DNA from: Macrostomum lignano | Lineage: Eukaryota | Reading direction: 5' to 3' | Assembly (NCBI GenBank): GCA_002269645.1 | Contig: NIVC01001696.1 | Location: 1-64,000, forward strand | DNA length: 64,000 bases | Part shown: positions 615 through 59,639 of the stretch, in pieces | Layout: every line of letters begins with the position of its first letter | Position numbering within the stretch: the first letter of the stretch is position 1 | Made by a program: the position numbers and the translations under genes | Notes under the pieces: generated by a model | Database searches by the model: none | Told to the model about the DNA's origin: nothing | The model's input: only the letters and a program-made list of their open reading frames with translations

Positions 615-1110
615 TCATTCTGTGCATCTTGCTCGCGCAAAGCTCAAACGTGACAAAGCATCAGCATCCGTCATCAGCCTCCCAGGCACGTACTCGACCA
701 CGTAATCGAAAGCCGACAGTCTCAAAGCCCAGCGCATTAGTCTTGCTGACACCGTTTTGGGAAGGTTTTTGCTCGGATTGAAAATATACTTTAGCGGCTC
801 ATGGTCGGTCTGGAGAGTAAACCTCTTGCCTAGCAGCATCTTGCGAGCTCTCTCCACTGCCCAAACAATTGCAAGGGCCTCTCTCTCAATGTTCGAGTAA
901 TTTGCTTCAGACTTCGTCAGAGCACGTGACAGGTACATAACCGGATGACCTGACTGCACCAGAACAGCACCCAATGACTGCTCACTAGCATCCACGCGGA
1001 GACAGACAGGAGAGCTGACATCAAATGGTTTCACGCACGGATTCGAACTTAGGCTCTGCTTCACATAGGCAAACGCGGCTTCGGCCACAGAACTCCACTC
1101 GAACACCGGT
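615..1110 (-). pseudogene. Gypsy RNase H domain
   Basis: VDASEQSLGAVL, YSNIEREALAIVWAV, TDHEPLKYIF, RWALRLSAFDY, ADALSR. Confidence 0.9.
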
Positions 1111-2533
1111 CCGCCCGGCGAAGTTCCTGCAAAGGCCGGCACTTCTCAGCAAAATTGGAGACCAACCGACCGTAGAACTGGGCCAGTCCCAGAAACCGCT
1201 CGAGGTCCTTCTTGTTCTTTGGAGCTTCCACATCCTGAATCCGCTGAACCATGCCAGGATCTGGCTTGATCCCTTCCTCATCTATTATGTGGCCAAGAAA
1301 CTTCAAACTGCGTGCTTCCATGATGCACTTTGCTTCATTGACTTTAACATTTGCCGCTCTCAGCTTGTCGAGTATTCCTGTGCGAATGTTCTCCAGCTCT
1401 GCCTTCGTCACCGCACCCATGAGGACGTCATCTTGGTACACAATGACACCTGGATGTTCGCCTAGCAGCTTCTCCATCTCACGCTGGAACACAGACGGAG
1501 AGACTTTAATGCCGTACGGCAGCCTATTGAAGCGATAACAGCCAAATGGAGTGTTGATGGTGGTGATGTCTTTAGACTCACTGTCCAGCGGTATTTGATA
1601 ATAGGCATCAGAAAGGTCAAGACGGCAAAACAGCTTCTTGTTGGCCATCTTGGAAAACGCTGTCTCTATTGATGGAGTCAGGTATGTCTGATCCTGCCCC
1701 CACTGATTGACTGCTGTGTAGTCTCCGCAAATCCTCACTGACGCCTTGTCTGACTTCACCGTCACCACAATCGGGCTGCCCCACTCCGACGATGTCACTC
1801 TCTCGACTATTCCCGCCTTCTCCATCAAGTCCAGCTCCTTTTTTACTAACGGACGCAGCGCCAATGGCAGCTCTCTGGCTGGCTGGAAGATCGGCCCGGC
1901 TCCTGTCTTCAACCGAATCTCTCCGACTGCTCCCTTAATACCCAGTAAGCTCTCATACCTGTTGCTGCTGGGTGCCTTGGCCTCATCAGAATGGTGAGCT
2001 GGCAGCGAGTTGAGCAAATCCCGGCCTAGCAGTCCAAACTTTTGCTGGCAGTCGATGACAGGCAACTCAGCGGCAATGAAGCGACCGTCCGTGCCGTCAG
2101 TCTCCACCAGGCACTCCAGGATGCCGAGCTGCTTCATCACATGACCGTCGTAGGCCAGCATCCGGGACTTCGCCGATTTCAGTGGCGGTCTGCCAAGATC
2201 TTCCCAGATCTTTCTTGATATCAGCGAGCACGCCGCACCGCTATCCTTCTCCATCTTCACCTGCTTGCCGTTGATCTTGACCATGCAGAAAGCAGCCGGG
2301 GTGCCCTCACCGCAGTAGAAGACGGGCTCATAACTGGTAGAATCTGCAGACATTGCTTTTTCTGCGGCGAAGTGAGTTTTGGCGCTCCTGCAGACTCGGG
2401 CGAAGTGTCCGAGTTTTCCGCACTGACGACAGGTGGCTTTCAGCGCCCAGCAGTCAGTTGGCTTGCGATGAGACTTCTGGCCGCAGCGCTGGCAGATCTG
2501 GCTTCCACTCACATTCGGTCTCGACTTCTCCAC
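1061..2533 (-). pseudogene. pol: Gypsy pol: CCHC knuckles, aspartic protease, reverse transcriptase
   Basis: CQRC..H..C and CRQCGKLGHFARVC; protease KDSGAACSLI; RT WGSPIVV, RICGDY, LDLSDAY, YQDDVL, FLGH. Confidence 0.92.
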
Positions 2534-3198
2534 CGCATTGACACCGGCGCGTCTTCGAGGTCCCGGCGTGGCGCATCGTGGCTAGGCGCCGTCTGGTGCA
2601 CCGCTGAACCAACTTGAGCCTGGCCTAACGCAGTCAGCGGCCCAGTCAAGAAGGTGCTCACCATCTGTAGCTGCTGCACATAGTCTGAAATCTGGTCCAC
2701 CGAAAGCTCCGACGAAACCTCACGTTCGAGCACTTTGCTTCTGATGTCCTGATTGCTGAGGCCAGCAATCAGTCGCATTTTGATCAGCTGCTCTGCTGGG
2801 TTCGCACCCTCGTCCTTTAGCTTCTCGAACTCACACACCACTGCTTGTTCTCGAAGACGGGCAGCGAAGCCGGTGATGCTCTCACCCTCGCCCTGGCGCA
2901 TGGACATGAAGGCCGCCCGCTCCGAAATCAGCAGCCTTTTCTGCGGTTCCAGAAACCGAATCAGGCACGCTTTGATGTCGGCCCACTTCATCTTAGAAAG
3001 CTGGCTCGGTGCCACCAGCTGCTTCACTTTGATTAGCTGAGCCACGCCCAGACAGCCCAGAAAAGCGTCTGTCAGTGCCAGGTTGCCGTCGGTGTCCTGC
3101 ACTCCTTTTGACCTTGCTTGAGCATCGAAGACTTCGACCCATGCCCGCAGCTCTTCAATGCTTTCCAGTGGCAGTGGGTCTCGTAGCTTGATAGACAT
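2509..3198 (-). pseudogene. gag: Gypsy gag (frameshifted before the zinc knuckles)
   Basis: ATG just after the PBS (MSIKLRDPLPLE...); Mag-like gag motifs (FMSMRQGEGESITGFAARLREQAVVCEF, IKMRLIAGL); the knuckles lie in another frame. Confidence 0.85.
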
Positions 3199-3205
3199 GC
3201 ATGCG

Positions 3206-3223
3206 ATCCTGCTCGCGACGCCA
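3206..3223 (-). promoter_or_regulatory. Primer-binding site, tRNA-Ser-like
   Basis: Minus strand TGGCGTCGCGAGCAGGAT; its complement ATCCTGCTCGCGACG-CCA resembles the 3' end of a tRNA-Ser(CGA)-type tRNA (from memory). Confidence 0.75.
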
Positions 3224-3226
3224 AAA

Positions 3227-3564
3227 TGTTGGAAATGACAAGCTAAGGCGAGCAATTGCTTTGAGACGAGAAAACGATAGCTCTGAGCCAATGCTCCGTG
3301 CGAAACTATTTATTATCAACGATAAAGCACGAACCCGCGACAACCCCCCAACCCAGGACTAAAACTCACCGCACTGCACATCAGAGCACGATGACAATAA
3401 TAACTTGATACGTACACTCAGACTGAACAAAAGTACAAGCACCAGTGAAATAGCATCAATACAATAATAACTTGATACGTACACTCAGACTGAACAAAAG
3501 TACAAGCACCAGTGAAATAAGCAATCAAATAATAAACAGTGCGAAGCCCCGCCCAAGCCTAACA
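3227..3564 (-). repeat. 5' LTR (338 bp) with an internal ~65-bp tandem duplication
   Basis: TGTT...AACA termini, located 3 nt from the PBS; duplicated block at ~3394-3451 and ~3461-3519. The second LTR lies outside the window, so it cannot be compared. Confidence 0.8.
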
Positions 3565-47905: not shown

Positions 47906-49886
47906 ATGCCAAACACCGTCAATGTTAGTGTCGAATACTGGTAAGTCATCAGCCTATGTTTTATTTTTAGAGAGTTTCATTTATCTCAGTATACGTACAT
48001 GTATATAGATTGTCTTTTTTAGACAGTAAATTTGATTGGGGTTACTGTGGAATTGCTGAGATGCCAAGGGTTAGTGGGGAATTGCTGAGATGCCAAGGGT
48101 TACTGGGGAATTGCTGAGATGCCAAGGGTTACTTGGGAATTGCTGAGATGCCAAGGGTTAGTGGGGAATTGCTGAGATGCCAAGGGTTAGTGGGGGAATT
48201 GCTGAGATGCCAAGGGTTAGTGGGGGAATTGCTGAGATGCCAAGGGTTAGTGGGGAATTGCTGAGATGCCAAGGGTTACTGGGGAATTGCTGAGATGCCA
48301 AGGGTTAGTGGGGAATTGCTGAGATGCCAAGGGTTACTGGGGAATTGCTGAGATGCCAAGGGTTACTGGGGAATTGCTGAGATGCCAAGGGTTAGTGGGG
48401 GAATTGCTGAGATGCCAAGGGTTAGTGGGGGAATTGCTGAGATGCCAAGGGTTAGTGGGGGAATTGCTGAGATGCCAAGGGTTACTGGGGAATTGCTGAG
48501 ATGCCAAGGGTTACTTGGGAATTGCTGAGATGCCAAGGGTTACTGGGGAATTGCTGAGATGCCAAGGGTTACTGGGGAATTGCTGAGATGCCAAGGGTTA
48601 CTTGGGAATTGCTGAGATGCCAAGGGTTACTGGGGAATTGCTGAGATGCCAAGGGTTAGTGGGGGAATTGCTGAGATGCCAAGGGTTAGTGGGGGAATTG
48701 CTGAGATGCCAAGGGTTAGTGGGGAATTGCTGAGATGCCAAGGGTTACTGGGGAATTGCTGAGATGCCAAGGGTTACTTGGGAATTGCTGAGATGCCAAG
48801 GGTTAGTGGGGGAATTGCTGAGATGCCAAGGGTTAGTGGGGGAATTGCTGAGATGCCAAGGGTTACTGGGGAATTGCTGAGATGCCAAGGGTTAGTGGGG
48901 AATTGCTGAGATGCCAAGGGTTACTGGGGAATTGCTGAGATGCCAAGGGTTAGTGGGGAATTGCTGAGATGCCAAGGGTTACTGGGGAATTGCTGAGATG
49001 CCAAGGGTTACTGGGGAATTGCTGAGATGCCAAGGGTTACTGGGGAATTGCTGAGATGCCAAGGGTTACTTGGGAATTGCTGAGATGCCAAGGGTTAGTG
49101 GGGGAATTGCTGAGATGCCAAGGGTTAGTGGGGGAATTGCTGAGATGCCAAGGGTTAGTGGGGGAATTGCTGAGATGCCAAGGGTTAGTGGGGAATTGCT
49201 GAGATGCCAAGGGTTACTGGGGAATTGCTGAGATGCCAAGGGTTAGTGGGGAATTGCTGAGATGCCAAGGGTTACTGGGGAATTGCTGAGATGCCAAGGG
49301 TTACTGGGGAATTGCTGAGATGCCAAGGGTTAGTGGGGAATTGCTGAGATGCCAAGGGTTACTGGGGAATTGCTGAGATGCCAAGGGTTACTGGGGAATT
49401 GCTGAGATGCCAAGGGTTACTGGGGAATTGCTGAGATGCCAAGGGTTAGTGGGGGAATTGCTGAGATGCCAAGGGTTACTGGGGAATTGCTGAGATGCCA
49501 AGGGTTACTGGGGAATTGCTGAGATGCCAAGGGTTACTGGGGAATTGCTGAGATGCCAAGGGTTAGTAAAATCTCTACTGATCATCTATAATTCCCCTCC
49601 CCCCCAACCTTACAGCAGCGTCCAATGAGACTACGAACCACGCTATGAGCACCTGCGCGAAGCAATTCTCAGCGCGTGCCCTAGCGGAGTTCAGGTATCC
49701 GGTGTTGCTGGTCGTCGGGGCGCTTACGAGGTGACAGTCAATGGCCAATTGATTTTCTCTAAGCTGAAGATGCGCTGTTTCCCCGTTGAGAAACAGGTGG
49801 TCGACGAGGTGAAGAAAGCCACGAATGGTGTGAAGCCTAAGAAGCTGGGATCAGATACCGGAGGTTGTGGATGTCATCTATTGTAG
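47906..49886 (+). CDS. MIEN1: Selenoprotein W2/MIEN1-like (Rdx family), paralog A; exons 47906-47940 and 49616-49886; Sec TGA at 49626-49628; 101 aa
   Basis: MPNTVNVSVEYC|SVQUDYEPRYEHLREAIL...GRRGAYEVTVNGQLIFSKLKMRCFP...GCGCHLL*. The frame stays open and homologous for 85 codons past the TGA; the TGA is shared with paralog B; SECIS in the 3'UTR. Confidence 0.92.
48040..49566. repeat. 29/30-bp minisatellite (GGGGAATTGCTGAGATGCCAAGGGTTACT)n in the paralog A intron
   Basis: About 52 units filling most of the intron. Confidence 0.98.
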
Positions 49887-50044
49887 CGCTATTGGCTTCG
49901 TTTTTACTTAATTTTCTTGATTTCTCTCTCATAAACGAAGTCTTTTTTCAATGAATAAACAGATTTTGATATTTGAAATGTATATTTCTACTTTAAGTAG
50001 ACTAAATAGTAGCATAAATTGAATTCAGAAACAAAAACAAATAG

Positions 50045-50184
50045 AAAAACCAGCGCGTGCCCAGACGTATGACGACAGGCCTCGGCGTTAAAATCCTAAT
50101 TGGAACCGTCCGCAGCATCGCACCGGATGGGCGCCACTTGTCTGACACACCTATCTGGCTGAGTCTGTGCGCGCGTTGGTTTTT
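50045..50184 (+). promoter_or_regulatory. SECIS element (atypical) of paralog A
   Basis: ATGA 50069-50072 / TGA 50143-50145 core; GACAGG:CTTGTC and GGCGT:GCGCC helix II; AAAA 50090-50093; TCC-TAATT-GGA mini-stem; 22-position basal helix. Confidence 0.85.
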
Positions 50185-50579
50185 TGGTTTCATTTAAACA
50201 AAAAAACTGTGAAAAAAGTTACGTTTATAAGAGGAGAAAGAAAGAAAATAAGTTGTGGCAGAAAAGTGTCTTAAAAGTAACTTTTGATTTATTCGGCATC
50301 AAATATACATGTATCTTGAAACATAGTTCATTTTTTTGCTTCATGCAGTCGCATGCTGCGCTACTTTTAATATCAAGGTTGAATACTTTTCTAGCGGCTT
50401 TTTTATGAAGGGCTACTTAAAAAAAGAATAAAAATACTAAATAGTTTGCTTGACTTGTGGACCATTAAAGATATGTACATTATGCTTAAATTAGAAAAAA
50501 TATACTATAGTTAGGGCAAGTTAGCTTAAAAATTTGTTAATTAGAAGAAAGTTAAAAGATAACTTTAAAATGGAAGAAA

Positions 50580-51440
50580 GGGCGCAGCTGGCACTGTGGC
50601 TGAGACGGCTCTGAGGGTCCTAAGCTGTCAGTCGAGATGCTCCTGGAGCTCTGCCATCTTGGGCATGAGAGGCTGCCTGTTAGAAGCAGGAAGATTGCGG
50701 ATCTCGCTCTGGAATTCAAGCGGCAGGCGGCTCCAGAGCGCGTAGACGTAGCTGTCGAGGGTGCAGGCAAGCTCGCCGAGGCGGAGGAGCTGGCCGGTGG
50801 CCAGGTGGAGGGCGTCTGTGAATTCCTTGAGCTCACCCAAGTCGGAGGCAGAGCTGAAGTGAAAGGCGAGGAGACGCTGGAAGGAGGCGTTCTTTTTCTC
50901 CTGCGTGTCGGCGTAGTTGGCCTGGAGGACACGCAGCAGTCCTCCACGTAGGCGCCCGGTTGGCAGGCGTCGAGGGCACCGAGATTCTTGAGAGCGGAGC
51001 CGGAGAGCAAACCGCGGAGTGCCTCAAATTTGTCGACGTCTTTGAGGCTGGAGCGGTCGACGCGGTAAACGAAGGCATCCCAGAAGCCCGGAAATGCAGC
51101 AGGGTCCGTACCGTCGAAGGTCGGGAGAAGCACGTTCTTGAGAATGGTGGAGCGGATGAGCCCGGTCGGATCGTGAGCATCTGATGCGGGCGTTGAGGCA
51201 GCTGGTGTCGAGGCTGGACGGACGGTGGCAGCTAGCGAGCTGTTGCATCAGGTGCTGGTTCTGCTGCATCATCGCGGGTCATGGAGGCGAGGTAAGGCGT
51301 TGACGTCAACTCCGGGTTAACAGGAGAGGCGGCAGAGATCGGTCTGAGCAGCAGGATCGGAGCCATTGCTCCGGCTGAAGAAGCTGGTGACGGGTCACTG
51401 AGGTCAAAGGGCGGTTGCTGATTTCCGTCAAGGCCGCGCG
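50580..51440 (-). pseudogene. BEL/Pao retrotransposon gag relic (DUF1759-like), frameshifted
   Basis: LLPTFDG...FWDAFVYRVDRSSLKDVDKFEALRGLLSGSA; flanking segments are in other frames; no pol. Confidence 0.75.
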
Positions 51441-53009: not shown

Positions 53010-56000
53010 ATGTCGCACCCCGTTACCGTTAGTGTTGAATACTGGTAAGTATCATTTTATTAATACTTTAACAGTTGAACTTGATGCACTAAAAAGATTA
53101 AAACATAGGGGATAGGTGGGTGGGGCTACCTTCTTCTTTAGTAGTACTATATACTAACTTTGATGCCATTGTATCCAAATGTCAAATCTGTTGAATCGGT
53201 TTTGAATCGATAGAAATCCACTAGGCCTATACTGAAATAGTTAGCTACAAGAATCTGTTAGGCCTAGTTTTTACAATAAATGAATTTAATTAGCAAACTA
53301 CGCCTAATTCCATTCTCTCTTGCTGTCCAATTGGTACAAACAGTTTTTATGAGGATAGGCCTAGTATAGAAGCGTTAAAGCTATACCCAAAGTTCCAGAC
53401 CAGTATCAGTCTAATAGGCCAACTATTTTTATATTTGTACATGCATGTGTTTCTATTATAATAAAGTTTGTGGCTATTATTAAGTGTTTAGGCCTATTTA
53501 GAGATGGATAAATAGTCTATTTTTGTATAGGCCCTATATGTAGAGTAATTATTATTAGTGTTGCTTCTCATCTCAACAAAACAAGAATATTTTATACAAT
53601 ATTTCTATTGCATTAATTTTGAAGTAAGTTGTATTAATATATTTATATTCTTGAAGGGGTAATTAAGCTAAGTTGGGAATCCTACAATGGCCACCAAGTT
53701 GTTCCAGGGGGTTCTATCTGGCTATTCACAATCCTACGGCTGTCACCAAATTGTTAGAGGATTTTATTTTTAATTTTAACCTATCCTGCTGATGCTACAG
53801 AACTCTTGAGTATCCTGGAATGAGTTTTATAATTTTAAAGGTTCATGTATAAGCTAGCCATTTAAACCAGTTAGAATTACTAGAATTACTAAGTTACGAG
53901 GTTAGAACTATGGGCTTTCATGTAAGTACGGATTGCCCTAGTAGCGCGTAGTGCCTGAGCAGCAAGACACTGTTTAGCTAAGGGGGTGACTAAGTCCTAA
54001 AAAGCAGTCATCTCCAATGGACCAAGGGTGCCCAGTGAATTCTTGTTTCCTATCTACAGATTTGCTTGTGTCATTCACGACCTGTCATTGGTTGTTCGAT
54101 TCGAAATAGCCACTGGGATAATTCTCCCTTGTCTATTGGCTGATCACGCCTCTGTTCTTTGCGGGTCCGCTTATTGGCTCATAGACTGTTAGTCTGATAC
54201 TCTTGGTAGATTCCACCTTTGCCCAATGAGCAGTCGCTCTCAGCTTTTGACAAATAAAGAAGGCTTGAACACCTCTAATTTTCTTAGGCAAATCGCCTCT
54301 ATATTCAGGATCGAGTAAAAAGCTCAGTCGCCTCTTTGGGTGCAAAACTCCCATGTATTTATAATAAGATTGGGGTGGGGGACCAGATTCATTTAAACAA
54401 AAAATATTTTCCAAGTTATGTTTCCATAGTGACGCAAAAATTTAAATTGGGCCTACATCAATGTTAAGTTTATTTACTTGCTAAGAACCATAGTCGGAAT
54501 AGTTTCCATGCATTTTGGTGCTTAGCATTTTGGTACTCCAGATTGCTTTTTGGTGCTCTAGTTTATGATGCCTAAATAATAATAAAAAGTAATATAATAG
54601 CAAATATAATAAATACTTTACAAAACATTTAGTATTTCTAATGAAAGCTATAATCCAGTAGGCCTATCTATTTTTTTTTCAATTGGCATGTCTTTTAAAT
54701 TTTGAAAAATCAGGTCAATTTAATTGTATGCACTTTTCGAATCCTTTATTACAATTATAAGGTTGCACTGCACTTAGCATGCATGCTAAGAAGAGTTATT
54801 TAGGTAAAGATGAAATCTATCAATAATGCTAAATGTAGTTTTGATCAAAATTATGGAATGGCACAAATCTATTCTAGTATTGATTTCTTGAGTCACATGA
54901 TTCTGTTTTATTTCTTAAAAAATCAAATTGAAAGAAAAAAATTACATGAAACAAGACCATTTTTTAATTTAAACCCAGGTCAGCTTAACAAAATGAATAC
55001 CTAAGTTATTAAATAAATAAGTATTATAAAGCAAAGTGCTTACTGCTAAATAGGGCTCATTTTTTATATTTTTGTGTTAACTCTAATTTTTAATTTAGGC
55101 ACCAAAAAGCAAACCGGGGTACCAAAATGTAGGGCAACAAAAAGGGTAGATACCGTCTAGATCATGCTAGGTGCATACCCAAATAAAACTTGAATAATTA
55201 CAAATGTATGCCAGAAAATTGAGTGTAGTGAATTAATTTTATAGATAAACAAAGTTTATTTACTTGCTGAGAACCATAGTCTTGATCATTCATGCCCTAA
55301 CAAAAATTAAATATATAAATGTATGCCAAAAAATAGAGTGCACACCTATTCTCAAAACTAAGCTGATTTTGCGACATTAAGTGACCTTTATATTTTTGTA
55401 TTTTTATATTTGTATTTTTATATTTTTATATTTTTGTGTTAACTCTAATTTTTAATTTAGGCACCAAAAAGCAAACCGGGGTACCAAAATGTAGGGCAAC
55501 AAAAAGGGTAGATACCGTCTAGATCATGCTAGGTGCATACCCAAATAAAACTTGAATAATTACAAATGTATGCCAGAAAATTGAGTGTAGTGAATTAATT
55601 TTATAGATAAACAAAGTTTATTTACTTGCTAAGAACCATAGTCTTGATCATTCATGCCCTAACAAAAATTAAATATATAAATGCATGCCAAAAAATAGAG
55701 TGCACACCTATTCTCAAAACTAAGCTGATTTTGCGACATTAAGTGACCTTTTTTATATTCTACTTTATAATAACTTTTCTATGATTCTATAAAATATATA
55801 CCAGGTATGCATGCATACTATTTTCTTAATAGTGATGTACACCAACTGTACATGCCTACTTTTGGCATGCAAGCAGTGTTGGGCACTATTAATGAAAATC
55901 TTAACTTTGTTAATGGCAAAAGCATTAGTGTTAAAACAAAAAAATCTTAACCTATTCACTTTTAATTTTGTTAAATTAACTAAAATTTAACTGATAATTG

Positions 56001-58936
56001 CTATTAAGTGTTAATCTATTAAAGTTACCACAGAAAATACAGAAATCTTGCAAAACAAACTTCATAATATACTGTCTGCTTTTCTACCTTTTAGCAAAAC
56101 ACTGAGATCATTTAAGGGATTTATAAGCTAAGAAAGTAAAAAATAATAATTTAAAAAACTTTTATGTGTAGTAGGGCAATATTTTAGGAATGGGAATTAG
56201 TAGCAAAGCAGATATGCTTTTTGCCTACTGTCAGTAGTTTAGGTTTAGGAAAGTAATTAGAGTGGGGGAAAAGCACTAGTTTTCGGGATTCCTTAGAAGT
56301 ATAGAGCAGTTTGGGGCTTGGGAAGCAGATTTGTTCATTCGCAGACTCGCAAAGTCTCAAATTAGTCTCAAATCACCGCGAGGCTATGGTTTTGTCTCGC
56401 ATAGAGGCGCCTAACCGCAGTACCTCTGTGAAACTTGTCTCTGCCTGGCTGAAAGCTTGTAATGAGTGAGTAGGCTGGGTTGGAGGGTAATAGTGGATCG
56501 GGAAGGGCTGTGGGTAGCTATATAGGAAGGCAGGCCTATACCTGTTCCAGTTGGTGCTTTGACGGTCTCCTTCAAGTGCCCTCTGAGCAAACAGCCAGCG
56601 ACCCTATTATAGCTGGAGTGTGCCAGAACCAGGACTGAGTCTGAGCAGGACGAGACCATTGGCATGGTCACTATAGAAATGGTCGGTTGGCGAAGCAAAG
56701 GGTGAAATAGTCCCGGCGATTAGCCCTCCTGCCGCTTCAAAGATAAGAGACTGTCTGGCAAGAGTACCCGGGGTTTAGTTGGGGGGGGAGGCTCTTTTGG
56801 GCTGCCACGGCTGTGGGGGCGGTCATATGACCAGTTTTTGGCTTTTCTAACCCATGGGATTCCTGACTGGTACATCCTTCCGCTGTCACTGTCCCCCAGG
56901 AAGGTTTTTGATTTGTCAATTGCCCTTTGTACAGTCCTCTTAGCTCCAATTAGGATCTCAGTGTACATAAGTACACTCCCAACCTGGAATTAATTTATAT
57001 CTAGTGGTGTAAGAGCCTAATCAATGGCTGAGGCGCCAAATACTTATTACTGTTACTGCTTGGGAAGCAGATTCGTTCGTTTGTGGACTCGCGAAGTCTC
57101 AAATTAGGAAAGGTAAGAGGCAGGAAAAATATTAGGAAATACGTAAAACTGTTAGTGGTAGTCGATGCCAACAACAGTACACTACAAGGTAGTCAATGCC
57201 TAGCTTTTCCCACAAGTAAAGTAACAATAACCATTGCATGCTGATTTTCTTTTCTTTTTTTGAAATAAAAAAGTTTTGTTAAATATTTTGGTTTTCCTGT
57301 GTCACTCCTTATCACTAAATTAATAGAAATAGGGAAGCAGGAAGCCTGGTGGCAGCAAATCTACCAAAATCTAAAACCAGTAAATCCACTAGTAAAATCC
57401 TTAGCAATAGAAAACCAGTAGCCCTAACCGCGAGGTACCACGCATGTCCATATGTATATAATACTACTAAAAATAAGCATATGGTAAAAAGGTCAGAGGT
57501 AACTCATTTATTTGAAACTTGAAAGCTAATTGATTAATAATAAAATACAAATATAAAGGTTGTTTCAATAGCATTAGTAAGTGCAGCAGAAAGTTAAGAA
57601 AAATTGGGAAAGAAGTGAATCAAAGTAATTGATGCTCATGCACAAGCAATAACATAATTTTAATTCATTATTAAAGTTCATTAGTAAGAAGTTATTATAT
57701 TTGCATCATCATTGTTAAAAACAAAAATGTTAATTATGTATTTAGATAAATTGAAATACATATTGCAATGTAACTTCTTGCCAGATTTATATTTTTGTTC
57801 TTTTTTGCATCCTTGGTCATTGACATTGCCATTAACGTTAAGGATGAATAAGGGATATTATTAATGCAAATTTGTTAATCCATTAGTGCAAAAAATCCTA
57901 ATGGCAGTCTATTAATGTTAATGAAAAATTCTAATGCTTATTAATGGATAAATGCTTATTAATGGACTAGTGCCTAACACTGCATACAAGGCCAATGCAC
58001 ACCTAAATTTTTGGGTGTACACTATACTATACTATATGCATGATCCAGTGTTTAGGCTAAGAACTATGTAAATACCAGTGTCAAGATCATATATTAGTAT
58101 AGGCCTAATGTATACCAGAACAAAATTTGCTTCTTGACTCTAGCTCATAGCTTTTATACTCATAAGCCATATATGCGCAACTGCTGGCCAACCTGGCCAA
58201 TCCAGCCACTGTAAATTATATAAGCTTTGTATTATATGCTAAGCTAGGTAATAGTCTAGCCTATTGACATAAGAGATCAGGCTGAGTGGCAAGTGGGAGC
58301 CAATACAAAAGCAGGGCCACAAAAGCCTTAACATGATCTGGGGCAACAAGGATGTGGAATTTTATTTGTATACACATTTGTGGACTAGTGTACTGTTGTT
58401 GCCAACCCAAGAAAAAGCAAGGGAAGAAAAGGAAAGAAAGCAAATTAAGAAAAAACAAATATGTGACTGTGACAATCTGCAATCAAAAGCAATAAGTAGT
58501 ATTAATAGCTTTAAATCATATTTAAAGGGTTGAAGCCAGTCTTTGCTTAGTTAGATGCCGAGACATTTTACTGGAGCAGCACAGTCATAATTACTCCTGC
58601 CGTTTACCCAGTTGCGATTTTTATTGAGCATATATCCTTACTGGTTATCCCAATTTCACCCAATGCAGTGGCAGCGGATGAGGCTACGAACCCCGCTATG
58701 AGCACCTGCGCAGAGCTATTCTCAGCGCGTGCCCCAGCGGGGTTCAGATCTCCGGTCACGATGGTCGCCGGGGCAGCTTCGAGGTGACAATCAATGGCCA
58801 GCTGATTTTCTCCAAGCTGAAGCTGCACGGCTTTCCTGATGAAAATCAGGTTGTCGAACAGGTGAAGCGAGCTACAAATGGCGACAATCCTAACGTACTG
58901 GAAGATTCTCAAAGTCCCGGATGTAATCTGCTGTAA
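53010..58936 (+). CDS. MIEN1: Selenoprotein W2/MIEN1-like (Rdx family), paralog B; exons 53010-53044 and 58669-58936; Sec TGA at 58679-58681; 100 aa
   Basis: MSHPVTVSVEYC|GSGUGYEPRYEHLRRAIL...GRRGSFEVTINGQLIFSKLKLHGFPDE...SPGCNLL*. Very similar to fish SelW2 (VEYCGGUGYEPRY...GSFEIEINGQLIFSKLE, from memory); SECIS present. Confidence 0.93.
55063..55757. repeat. ~362-bp tandem duplication in the paralog B intron
   Basis: Two near-identical copies (e.g. TACCGTCTAG at 55151 and 55513). Confidence 0.92.
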
Positions 58937-59093
58937 TGCTGTGCTTCGCTATTAACTTTTCATTTACAATCTCTCCGAAGAGCGTTTTCTCTTTTTTACA
59001 ATGAATAAACAAATTTAGACGGTCAAAAACGTATATTTCTACTGTAAGTAGACTAAATAGTAGCATGAATTGAATTTCGTCAAAAACAAATAG

Positions 59094-59255
59094 AAAAACC
59101 AGCGCGAGCCCAGACGTATGACGACAGGCCTCGGCGTTAAAATCCTAATTGGAACCGTCCGCACCAGTACACCGGATGGGCGCCACCTGTCTGATATTAT
59201 TGGCTAAAACTTTGCTTGACATTGTTTGGCTAAGTCTGTGCGCGCGTTGGGTTTT
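59094..59255 (+). promoter_or_regulatory. SECIS element (atypical) of paralog B
   Basis: ATGA 59118-59121 / TGA 59192-59194; GACAGG:CCTGTC (G-C where paralog A has G-U); same AAAA, mini-stem and extra hairpin. Confidence 0.85.
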
Positions 59256-59639
59256 TTGGTTTCATTTATAAACAAAAAATTACATTGATATGATTAGAAA
59301 GAGAGAAAATCACTTTGTGGCAGAAAAGTGTCTTAAAAGTAATTTTTGATTTATTAAGCGTCAAATATATCCTAAAACATTGTTTTTTTGCTTTCTGTGC
59401 ACTCGTATGCTGTGCAACATTTATTCAGGTTGAAAACTTTTTACCCGCGGTATTTTTGGACCGATACAATTAAGCTCTGTGTTTTATTTAAAGGCCACTT
59501 AAATTGAAATATAAAATATAATAAATCAGAATTCTACGAGTGTAAGTTACTCGCCCACTATAAAATCTCTCAATTTTAACTTTATTAAAGAGTAAAAAGT
59601 TTTCGAGTTTTCTAATTTTTACTTTTCACCTATCCAGTG

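What the first reader, a model, noticed from the sequence alone, without database searches (positions are those of the whole stretch)
50045..50184. Atypical three-way-junction SECIS with an extra hairpin and a 22-position basal helix, conserved in both paralogs
Seen (A, with B at 59094-59255): AUGA/UGA core, then GACAGG:CUUGUC (CCUGUC in B, a G-U/G-C swap), a 4x1 internal loop, GGCGU:GCGCC, AAAA and a UCC-UAAUU-GGA mini-stem. An additional 7-bp hairpin CCGUCCG-[11 nt]-CGGAUGG follows; its stem is invariant while its loop differs between paralogs (CAGCAUCGCAC vs CACCAGUACAC). Helix I pairs 50045-50066 with 50163-50184 (21/22 pairs in A, 19/22 in B), and the 3' internal loop is ~16 nt in A and ~39 nt in B. 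Known: canonical type I/II SECIS have about 11-13 nt between the core and the AA motif and no third arm; here the spacing is 16 nt. Inference: an undescribed SECIS architecture that pattern-based finders could miss, so other selenoproteins in this lineage could be unannotated.
Basis: partly seen in the sequence, partly recalled or inferred. Interest (0 to 1): 0.85.

Follow-up and report, generated by a model that had tools for sequence, protein, structure and literature searches.

The report
Branched SECIS in flatworm SelW genes
Two neighbouring selenoprotein W-like genes of the flatworm Macrostomum lignano carry a conserved selenocysteine-insertion RNA signal with a normal core but a bulged stem and an enlarged, probably branched tip, a shape that standard search rules discard.

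Summary
The window comes from Macrostomum lignano (assembly GCA_002269645.1). It holds two tandem two-exon Rdx/SelW-like genes, each with an in-frame TGA at the redox position.

About 180 nt after each stop codon lies the described element. It has:
- a long helix I;
- an A-UGA/GA core;
- an 11-bp helix II interrupted by a CCUC/A internal loop;
- a UAAAA run;
- a 3-bp mini hairpin;
- a 7-bp hairpin.

Neutral divergence between the paralogs is about 40-45%, but the stems and motifs differ by 0-8%. The 7-bp stem has 0/14 changes and its loop 4/11. There is no other SECIS candidate in either 3'UTR.

Nine SECIS candidates outside M. lignano (eight homologues and one TGR) are all unbranched, with 11-13 nt spacing; the five homologue genes read are CxxU. 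So the Macrostomum form is derived. It violates four published SECISearch filters, and a covariance model built from canonical relatives did not report it.

Caveats:
- There is no covariation and no experimental evidence.
- The branch depends on a weak 3-bp stem.
- The 7-bp hairpin may simply be the type II helix 3, with a 12-nt insertion beside it.

Verdict: a new variant of a known kind, of moderate interest.

The parts
47906..47940 (+). Gene A exon 1 coding part: MPNTVNVSVEY plus TG of the Cys codon, followed by the donor GTAAGT
   Evidence: This is the only upstream stretch similar between the paralogs. The same exon end (EY + TG|GTAAGT or GTGAGG) is seen in homologues L010 and L011.
49616..49886 (+). 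Gene A exon 2 coding part: (C)SVQ-U-DYEPRY...GCGCHLL, then the stop TAG at 49884-49886
   Evidence: Pfam Rdx PF10262, E = 2.5e-13. dN/dS is 0.34 against paralog B.
49626..49628 (+). In-frame TGA (Sec codon 16) of gene A, at the Rdx redox position
   Evidence: Homologues have TGA at the same place.
50045..50184 (+). SECIS A, whole element
50045..50066 (+). SECIS A helix I, 5' strand. It pairs with 50163-50184 (21 pairs, one C.U mismatch).
   Evidence: 1 of 22 positions differs from B on the 5' strand and 0 of 22 on the 3' strand.
50069..50073 (+). Unpaired A plus the UGAC 5' half of the non-Watson-Crick quartet (K-turn core)
   Evidence: It matches the SECISaln consensus A-UGAN followed by G. 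It is invariant in all four copies.
50074..50088 (+). Helix II 5' strand: GACAGG, the CCUC bulge (50080-50083), then GGCGU
   Evidence: 0 of 15 positions differ from B.
50089..50093 (+). UAAAA: the unpaired A-run at the top of helix II (AAR motif position)
   Evidence: Invariant.
50094..50105 (+). 12-nt UCC-UAAUU-GGA-A: a 3-bp mini hairpin, or an insertion in internal loop 2
   Evidence: Pair probability 0.95 in the model but only -1.6 kcal/mol in isolation. 0 of 12 positions differ from B.
50106..50130 (+). 7-bp hairpin CCGUCCG-[CAGCAUCGCAC]-CGGAUGG, directly abutting the 3' strand of helix II
   Evidence: Pair probability 0.99. It contributes about -12 kcal/mol. The stem has 0 of 14 changes and the loop 4 of 11 against B.
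50131..50142 (+). Helix II 3' strand: GCGCC, A50136, CUUGUC
   Evidence: The U at 50138 gives a G.U pair that is private to this copy.
50143..50146 (+). UGAC: the 3' half of the quartet (UGAU in B)
50147..50162 (+). 3' internal loop. It is unconstrained and carries a 22-nt insertion in B.
   Evidence: 7 of 16 aligned positions differ. The insertion is seen.
53010..53044 (+). Gene B exon 1 coding part: MSHPVTVSVEY plus TG, followed by the donor GTAAGT
58669..58936 (+). Gene B exon 2 coding part: (C)GSG-U-GYEPRY...SPGCNLL, then stop. The TGA is at 58679-58681.
   Evidence: The product after the TGA is P0001 in the protein collection. The same 90% cluster holds P0002, listed as NCBI PAA68382.1 and PAA73720.1.
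59094..59255 (+). SECIS B. AUGA 59118-59121; helix II 59123-59128/59186-59191 and 59133-59137/59180-59184; AAAA 59139-59142; mini hairpin 59143-59153; 7-bp hairpin 59155-59179; 3' GA 59193-59194; helix I 59099-59115/59234-59250.
50427..50432 (+). First AATAAA downstream of SECIS A (the counterpart in B is at 59520-59525). This is the likely distal poly(A) signal, which would keep the SECIS in the mRNA.
   Evidence: Paralog similarity ends at about 50390/59441. Its use as a poly(A) signal is inferred.

Best explanation
The element is the working SECIS of two tandem SelW-like (Rdx family) selenoprotein genes of Macrostomum lignano.

Inferred from established SECIS biology:
- The A-UGA/UGA quartet forms the K-turn that SECIS-binding protein 2 recognises.
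- The complex recruits eEFSec with Sec-tRNA, so that the UGA at codon 16, about 440 nt upstream in the same last exon, is read as selenocysteine.

Shown here from sequence:
- Helix II has 11 pairs plus one C.A mismatch. That puts the unpaired A-run at the usual helical distance from the core when measured on the 3' strand.
- Three extra nucleotides bulge out on the 5' strand.
- The apex is enlarged. The A-run is followed by a 12-nt segment that can form a 3-bp mini hairpin. A 7-bp hairpin then continues helix II directly.

The result is either a Y-shaped three-way junction or a type II SECIS with a 17-nt 5' bulge. All of these parts are under purifying selection. The form is derived, because relatives in other animals have plain hairpin SECISes. 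What the added parts do is not shown. The most likely role is to stabilise and present the A-run.
For: Gene context:
- Pfam Rdx hits place the TGA at the redox position.
- Exon 1 and exon 2 join in frame across the TGA in both paralogs.
- dN/dS is 0.34 with dS 0.64 over 100 codons.
- Homologues have TGA at the same site.

Element:
- The core matches the SECISaln consensus, and helix II length lies within that paper's 11-16 bp range.
- The fold is the minimum-energy structure in both copies, with z about -4.
- It is the only conserved AUGA...GA candidate within 1.5 kb of either stop codon.

Selection:
- Unconstrained stretches differ by 39-46% between A and B.
- Stems and motifs differ by 0-8%.
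- The 7-bp stem has 0/14 changes and its loop 4/11. The mini hairpin has 0/12.
- The diverged loop and the 22-nt insertion in B argue against recent gene conversion.
- The same element is present at homeologous loci L004 and L005.

Derived state:
- Eight homologue loci (L009-L011, L013-L016, L019) and one TGR transcript (L007) have unbranched SECIS candidates with 11-13 nt spacing.
Against: - There is no compensatory base change in any helix. Only four near-identical sequences from one species were available.
- I had no transcript data, so inclusion of the element in the mRNA is inferred.
- A conserved AATAAA lies upstream of the SECIS in both genes and could yield SECIS-less transcripts.
- There is no evidence of Sec incorporation or SBP2 binding.
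- Other 3'UTR blocks that are not part of the SECIS are also conserved, so conservation alone does not assign function to each arm.
- The redox motif reads CxxxU rather than CxxU under the best gene model, which is itself unusual.
Confidence: 0.8

Rival explanations
1. The UCC/GGA mini-stem is the ancestral type II helix 3. The 7-bp hairpin is a true additional third arm forming an obligatory three-way junction with a function of its own, for example docking a lineage-specific factor or tuning Sec insertion efficiency.
For: - The minimum-energy and centroid folds of both copies contain all three helices, with pair probabilities of 0.95 or more.
- The three-way form is 3.6 kcal/mol better than the form without the mini-stem.
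- The stem is invariant while the loop is free to vary.
Against: - The mini-stem has only 3 bp and -1.6 kcal/mol in isolation.
- Multiloop energies are the least reliable part of the folding model.
- The 7-bp hairpin has a zero-nucleotide linker to helix II, which is the position of helix 3 in type II elements.
- There is no covariation.
Confidence: 0.35
2. The enlarged apex and the bulge are tolerated baggage. An insertion occurred before the gene duplication. It is kept because disrupting it would misfold the SECIS, not because it adds any function.
For: - Relatives work with plain hairpins.
- SECIS apices are known to vary; long mini-stems occur in Ostreococcus, Chlamydomonas and Dictyostelium.
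- The hairpin loop sequence is free to vary.
Against: - 0/14 and 0/12 changes in the two added segments, against about 40% neutral divergence, show constraint on sequence or pairing.
- This constraint is still compatible with a purely structural need.
Confidence: 0.3
3. It is not the functional SECIS. Either the genes are decaying pseudogenes or UGA-terminated fragments, or the real SECIS lies elsewhere.
For: - No RF00031 hit was found.
- The redox motif is an odd CxxxU.
- AATAAA lies upstream of the element.
Against: - Purifying selection acts on the reading frame on both sides of the TGA.
- The genes are retained in two paralogs and at least two further loci.
- There is no alternative candidate within 1.5 kb.
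- The element is the best conserved part of the 3'UTR.
- RF00031 also misses canonical SECISes.
Confidence: 0.06
4. It is an ordinary type II SECIS that standard tools would accept, so nothing is atypical.
For: - The core, the A-run, the pair count of helix II and helix I are all canonical.
Against: - The spacing is 17 nt and AA-to-GA is about 50 nt.
- There is a 4x1 internal loop and a branched or greatly enlarged apex, and each is outside the published filters.
- The canonical covariance model R2 did not report it, while held-out canonical elements scored 9.6-18.2 bits.
Confidence: 0.05

Closest known systems
Eukaryotic type II (form 2) SECIS element (Grundner-Culemann 1999; Fagegaltier 2000; SECISaln consensus, PMC2647825; Rfam RF00031)
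   Same: - Location in the 3'UTR.
- Helix I and an internal loop.
- An unpaired A before the UGAN/NGAN quartet.
- G:C as the first pair after the quartet.
- Helix II within the 11-16 bp range.
- An unpaired A-run on the 5' side above helix II.
- A further helix stacked on helix II.
   Different: - A 3-nt bulge (4x1 loop) inside helix II, giving 17 nt instead of 10-13 nt between core and A-run.
- A 17-nt 5' side of internal loop 2 that can form its own 3-bp hairpin.
- About 50 nt from the A-run to the 3' GA, instead of 15-39.
- A 21-pair helix I.
- No score with RF00031 or with a canonical model built here.
Lineage-specific SECIS variants with long mini-stems (Ostreococcus, Chlamydomonas, Dictyostelium; Lobanov et al. 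2007, PMC2375036)
   Same: - An enlarged apical part on a canonical core.
- A lineage-restricted variant that needed modified search patterns.
   Different: Those are unbranched extensions of helix 3. Here extra sequence sits between the A-run and helix 3 and is predicted to branch, and helix II is bulged.
SECIS elements of homologous SelW-like genes in other eukaryotes (L009, L010, L011, L013-L016, L019)
   Same: - The same protein family.
- In the two homologues with genomic sequence (L010, L011), the same intron position, inside the Cys codon.
- TGA at the same site in the five homologues read (L009-L013).
- AUGA(C/A/U) core.
   Different: All are single hairpins of 31-44 nt between the core halves with 11-13 nt spacing. 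The five read have CxxU, whereas M. lignano has CxxxU.

Membership tests
Eukaryotic SECIS element | Lies in the 3'UTR of a gene with an in-frame UGA at a known Sec position | tested here: met
   The Rdx domain aligns with the TGA at the redox Cys/Sec position. The stop codon is 183 nt before the core.
Eukaryotic SECIS element | Quartet of non-Watson-Crick pairs, UGAN/NGAN with tandem G.A, preceded by an unpaired A | tested here: met
   A-UGAC at 50069-50073 faces UGAC at 50143-50146 (UGAU in B), read directly from sequence. It is invariant in four copies. The actual non-canonical pairing is not testable here.
Eukaryotic SECIS element | Helix II of 11-16 bp between the quartet and the apical A-run | tested here: met
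   6 + 5 pairs plus a C.A mismatch. The range is from SECISaln.
Eukaryotic SECIS element | 10-13 nt between NUGA and the unpaired AA, and no more than 2 consecutive unpaired nucleotides in the stem | tested here: not met
   The spacing is 17 nt, and the CCUC bulge gives 4 unpaired nucleotides. The criteria are quoted.
Eukaryotic SECIS element | Unpaired AA(R) at the top of helix II | tested here: met
   UAAAA at 50089-50093 is unpaired in the minimum-energy and centroid folds.
Eukaryotic SECIS element | Unbranched apex (type I loop, or type II internal loop plus helix 3), with 15-39 nt from AA to the 3' GA | tested here: not met
   A three-way junction is predicted. The distance from the A-run to the GA is about 50-52 nt.
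Eukaryotic SECIS element | Reaches the Rfam RF00031 gathering score | tested here: not met
   There was no hit even at E <= 10 in 800 nt. This is a weak test. None of nine comparators reached the gathering score, and only four were listed at all.
Eukaryotic SECIS element | Binds SBP2 and supports Sec insertion at UGA | not testable with these tools
   This needs a binding assay, a reporter, or 75Se labelling.
Rdx / selenoprotein W-like family | Rdx thioredoxin-like domain (Pfam PF10262) | tested here: met
   E = 2.5e-13 for A and 4e-15 for B, above the curated cut-off.
Rdx / selenoprotein W-like family | CxxU (or CxxC) redox motif | tested here: not met
   The best gene models give C-S-V-Q-U (A) and C-G-S-G-U (B), which is CxxxU. 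The five homologue genes read (L009-L013) have CGGU or CGAU. A NAGNAG acceptor could give CVQU in A only. No transcript data were available to check this.

The most novel reading that the evidence does not exclude
Macrostomum, and perhaps a wider flatworm clade, uses a distinct branched SECIS class. In this reading the extra arm and the helix II bulge are functional modules, such as a docking site for a lineage-specific factor or a tuner of Sec insertion efficiency. This class would be coupled to SelW-like proteins with a CxxxU redox motif. Because standard finders reject Y-shaped candidates, further selenoprotein genes with this SECIS type would remain unannotated in these genomes.
Probability: 0.15. 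Interest if true: 0.75.

Novelty: new variant of a known kind. Interest (0 to 1): 0.55.

Why it matters
Eukaryotic selenoprotein discovery depends on SECIS models. [quoted passage not shown]

A conserved SECIS that breaks all of these rules, attached to genes that clearly need one, shows that the rules are not universal. It gives a concrete test case for how much the apex and helix II can be altered while the K-turn and the A-run still work.

M. lignano can be made transgenic, so deletion variants could be tested in the native animal.

The practical consequence is that selenoproteomes of flatworms may be under-counted. That was not shown here.

Tried and rejected
1. Rfam RF00031 as a discriminator. 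There was no hit at gathering score or at E <= 10. However, the model also missed five of nine canonical comparator SECISes, so I give this little weight.

2. Looking for another, canonical SECIS in either 3'UTR.
- An ungapped-helix scan found none.
- In a constrained-fold scan, the described element was the best candidate in B.
- In A, the only stronger candidates were GC-rich multibranched folds inside a non-conserved retroelement.

3. Orthologues from other Macrostomum species, to test covariation.
- The word-indexed protein search found only the window's own paralog.
- An exact 29-nt SECIS pattern found nothing in the metagenome contigs.

4. Other M. lignano selenoprotein SECISes as a lineage control. 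A thioredoxin glutathione reductase probe returned 4650 hits, and no M. lignano entry was among the 120 listed. I used one hit only as an Rfam positive control.

5. A 12-sequence alignment was too diverse for the search for related loci. A 4-sequence alignment worked.

6. The supplements of the platyhelminth selenoproteome paper are not held.

7. Gene conversion as the cause of conservation. I rejected this because the hairpin loop (4/11) and the 3' internal loop (44% different, plus a 22-nt insertion) have diverged inside the conserved block.

8. The element as a repeat or transposon fragment. I rejected this because the hairpin pattern occurs only at the two SECIS sites in the window.

Full report
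**Origin and gene context**

The window is part of contig NIVC01001696.1 of assembly GCA_002269645.1. The accession prefix NIVC00000000 belongs to the Mlig_3_7 genome of the free-living flatworm Macrostomum lignano.

The finding sits behind a short reading frame that Pfam assigns to the Rdx family (SelW/SelT/SelH). The E-values are 2.5e-13 and 4e-15, and the domain begins exactly at an in-frame TGA.

A self-comparison shows two paralogous units, 49625-50390 and 58678-59441, at 77% identity. A 52-nt match further upstream turned out to be exon 1.

The gene models are:
- A: 47906-47940 plus 49616-49886.
- B: 53010-53044 plus 58669-58936.

Both models join in frame inside a Cys codon at a GTAAGT donor. 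The products are 101 and 100 residues long, with Sec at position 16.

Over 100 codons spanning the TGA, dS is 0.64 and dN/dS is 0.34. Both genes are therefore under purifying selection as readthrough proteins. UniRef lists a fused model of this locus as selenoprotein W.

**The observation**

RNAfold gives the described structure as the minimum-energy and centroid fold for both copies:
- A: -62.7 kcal/mol, z = -4.3.
- B: -65.1 kcal/mol, z = -3.8.
- None of 200 shuffles folds as well.

Pair probabilities are:
- 1.0 for the inner part of helix I.
- 0.96-0.98 for the upper part of helix II.
- 0.95 for the 3-bp mini-stem.
- 0.99 for the 7-bp hairpin.

Minor corrections:
- The hairpin loops differ at 4 of 11 positions.
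- The G.U pair is private to this A copy.
- B's long 3' loop carries a 22-nt insertion and is predicted to fold on itself.

**Is it the SECIS?**

The core reads A-UGAC-G ... C-UGA-C (C-UGA-U in B). This matches the SECISaln consensus of an unpaired A, UGAN/KGAW, and a G:Y first pair.

Helix II has 11 pairs plus a C.A mismatch, within that paper's 11-16 bp range. An unpaired UAAAA follows.

No other candidate exists within 1.5 kb of either stop codon:
- An ungapped-helix scan found nothing.
- In a constrained-fold scan, the described element was the best candidate in B.
- In A, it was beaten only by GC-rich multibranched folds inside a non-conserved retroelement.

An AATAAA lies 243-265 nt downstream of the element in both genes, just beyond the end of paralog similarity. 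Another, conserved AATAAA lies upstream of the element. Inclusion in the mRNA is therefore likely but inferred.

**Selection**

Differences between A and B, by segment:

| Segment | Difference between A and B |
|---|---|
| Intron end | 43% |
| First 62 nt of the 3'UTR | 39% |
| 3' internal loop of the element | 44% |
| Synonymous sites | 43% |
| Helix I strands | 1/22 and 0/22 |
| Core | 0/7 |
| Helix II 5' strand, including the CCUC bulge | 0/15 |
| UAAAA | 0/5 |
| Mini hairpin | 0/12 |
| 7-bp stem | 0/14 |
| Loop of the 7-bp hairpin | 4/11 |

With about 40% neutral divergence, 14 unchanged stem positions have a probability near 8e-4 (my calculation, 0.6^14).

The diverged loop and the insertion in B lie inside an otherwise identical block. 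That argues against recent gene conversion.

Homeologous loci L004 and L005 carry the same elements.

There are no compensatory changes in any helix. The structural evidence is therefore thermodynamic plus the stem/loop conservation contrast, not covariation.

**How atypical is it?**

Published SECISearch procedures set these requirements:
- 10-13 nt between NUGA and the unpaired AA.
- 15-39 nt from AA to the 3' GA.
- No more than two consecutive unpaired nucleotides.
- Exclusion of Y-shaped candidates.

The element has 17 nt, about 50 nt, four unpaired nucleotides (CCUC), and a predicted Y shape. It fails all four.

Rfam RF00031 gives no hit even at E <= 10 in 800 nt. I do not lean on this. 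RF00031 listed only four of nine canonical comparators, at 24-32 bits, all below its 35-bit gathering score.

As a better control I built a covariance model (R2) from five canonical SECISes of homologous genes:
- With filters off, it scored four held-out canonical SECISes at 18.2, 14.8, 12.4 and 9.6 bits.
- It did not report the Macrostomum element at all in the 564-nt 3'UTR, where matches down to 0.9 bits were listed.

**Relatives**

A phmmer search of 1.84 billion representatives found 128 relatives. Many end in a Cys-x-x-x box and have a W at the Sec position, because TGA was read as Trp by the gene caller.

I fetched loci for some of these and for metagenome or metatranscriptome relatives.

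- L009, L010 and L011 show TGA within CGAU or CGGU.
- L010 and L011 share the intron position inside the Cys codon.
- All eight homologue loci (L009-L011, L013-L016, L019), and the TGR control L007, have single-hairpin SECIS candidates with 11-13 nt spacing.

The Macrostomum architecture, and its CxxxU motif, are therefore derived states.

**Which arm is extra?**

Energy evaluation of the upper domain:

| Form | Energy |
|---|---|
| Three-way form | -23.1 kcal/mol |
| Without the mini-stem | -19.5 kcal/mol |
| Without the 7-bp hairpin | -11.2 kcal/mol |
| Mini hairpin in isolation | -1.6 kcal/mol |

The 7-bp hairpin joins the 3' strand of helix II with no linker. That is the place of helix 3 in type II elements and favours coaxial stacking (inference).

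I therefore think it at least as likely that the 7-bp hairpin is the ordinary helix 3, and that UCC-UAAUU-GGA-A is a 12-nt insertion in internal loop 2. Either way, the element lies outside the canonical description.

**Mechanism (inferred)**

- SBP2 binds the K-turn.
- Helix II has one helical turn on the 3' strand, with CCU extruded. This presents the A-run at the canonical distance.
- eEFSec with Sec-tRNA is delivered to UGA codon 16.
- The UGA lies in the last exon, so no exon junction follows it. In mammals that would spare the mRNA from nonsense-mediated decay; this is established knowledge that has not been tested in flatworms.
- The role of the added parts is unknown. Stabilising the junction is the simplest idea.

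**Literature**

I found nothing describing branched SECISes in searches for three-way junction, Y-shaped, additional helix, or atypical, unusual or non-canonical SECIS. I also found no paper on Macrostomum selenoproteins.

The platyhelminth selenoproteome study covers Schmidtea, Schistosoma and Taenia. It used the standard metazoan SECIS patterns.

**Verdict**

This is a real, conserved and very probably functional SECIS with a derived, non-canonical architecture. It is a new variant of a known kind. The branching itself, and any lineage-wide consequence, remain unproven.

Noticed in passing
window 47938-47940 + 49616-49628 (gene A); 53042-53044 + 58669-58681 (gene B): The redox motif reads C-S-V-Q-U in A and C-G-S-G-U in B. 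This is CxxxU, one residue longer than the CxxU (CGGU or CGAU) of the five homologue genes read. B differs from L010 by an extra AGC codon. A NAGNAG acceptor could restore CVQU in A only.
   Followed up: partly
window 49872-49883 (CHLL) and 58922-58933 (CNLL); homologues P0125-P0147: This SelW-like subfamily ends in a conserved Cys-x-x-x box (CHLL, CNLL, CVLL, CVIL, CIIL, CVIM, CSIL, CTIL...). This looks like a CaaX prenylation signal and suggests membrane anchoring.
   Followed up: partly
window 49949-49965 and 58999-59015: The block CAATGAATAAACA is conserved (1 of 17 positions differs) and contains an AATAAA upstream of the SECIS in both paralogs. It may be a proximal poly(A) site that would give SECIS-less transcripts.
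   Followed up: partly
window 49979-50026 (B: about 59030-59077): A 48-nt 3'UTR block just before the SECIS is 92% conserved. It includes a small palindrome, UCUAC-UUUAA-GUAGA, whose loop changes (U to G) while the stem is kept.
   Followed up: no
window 50251-50295 (B: about 59306-59350): A second conserved 3'UTR block lies downstream of the SECIS (TTGTGGCAGAAAAGTGTCTTAAAAGTAA...). 5 of 45 positions differ. Its function is unknown.
   Followed up: no
window 48039-49565: Intron 1 of gene A is almost entirely a 29-nt minisatellite of about 52 copies at 96% match. The corresponding intron of B is 5.6 kb and unrelated.
   Followed up: partly
window 59195-59233: The 3' internal loop of SECIS B carries a 22-nt insertion that repeats TTGGCTAA. 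The repeats are predicted to pair into an extra hairpin beside the core.
   Followed up: partly
window 615-3291 (-) and 50552-51133 (-): Retroelement reading frames are present. A gag/protease/reverse-transcriptase-like set lies at the start of the window. A GC-rich, gag-like-looking ORF lies immediately downstream of gene A's 3'UTR. Neither was run through a domain search.
   Followed up: no
L004 461-612 and 10405-10578; L005 10408-10582: The same SelW-like gene pair recurs on at least two other contigs of the assembly, at 97-100% identity in the SECIS. This fits the duplicated M. lignano genome. An A copy was not found within 10 kb upstream in L005.
   Followed up: partly
L010 1-1103 and L011 1-2952: In two unidentified animal genomes, the SelW-like homologue lies next to a TRPM channel-alpha-kinase gene. 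This suggests conserved synteny there. No such gene was looked for beside the M. lignano pair.
   Followed up: no
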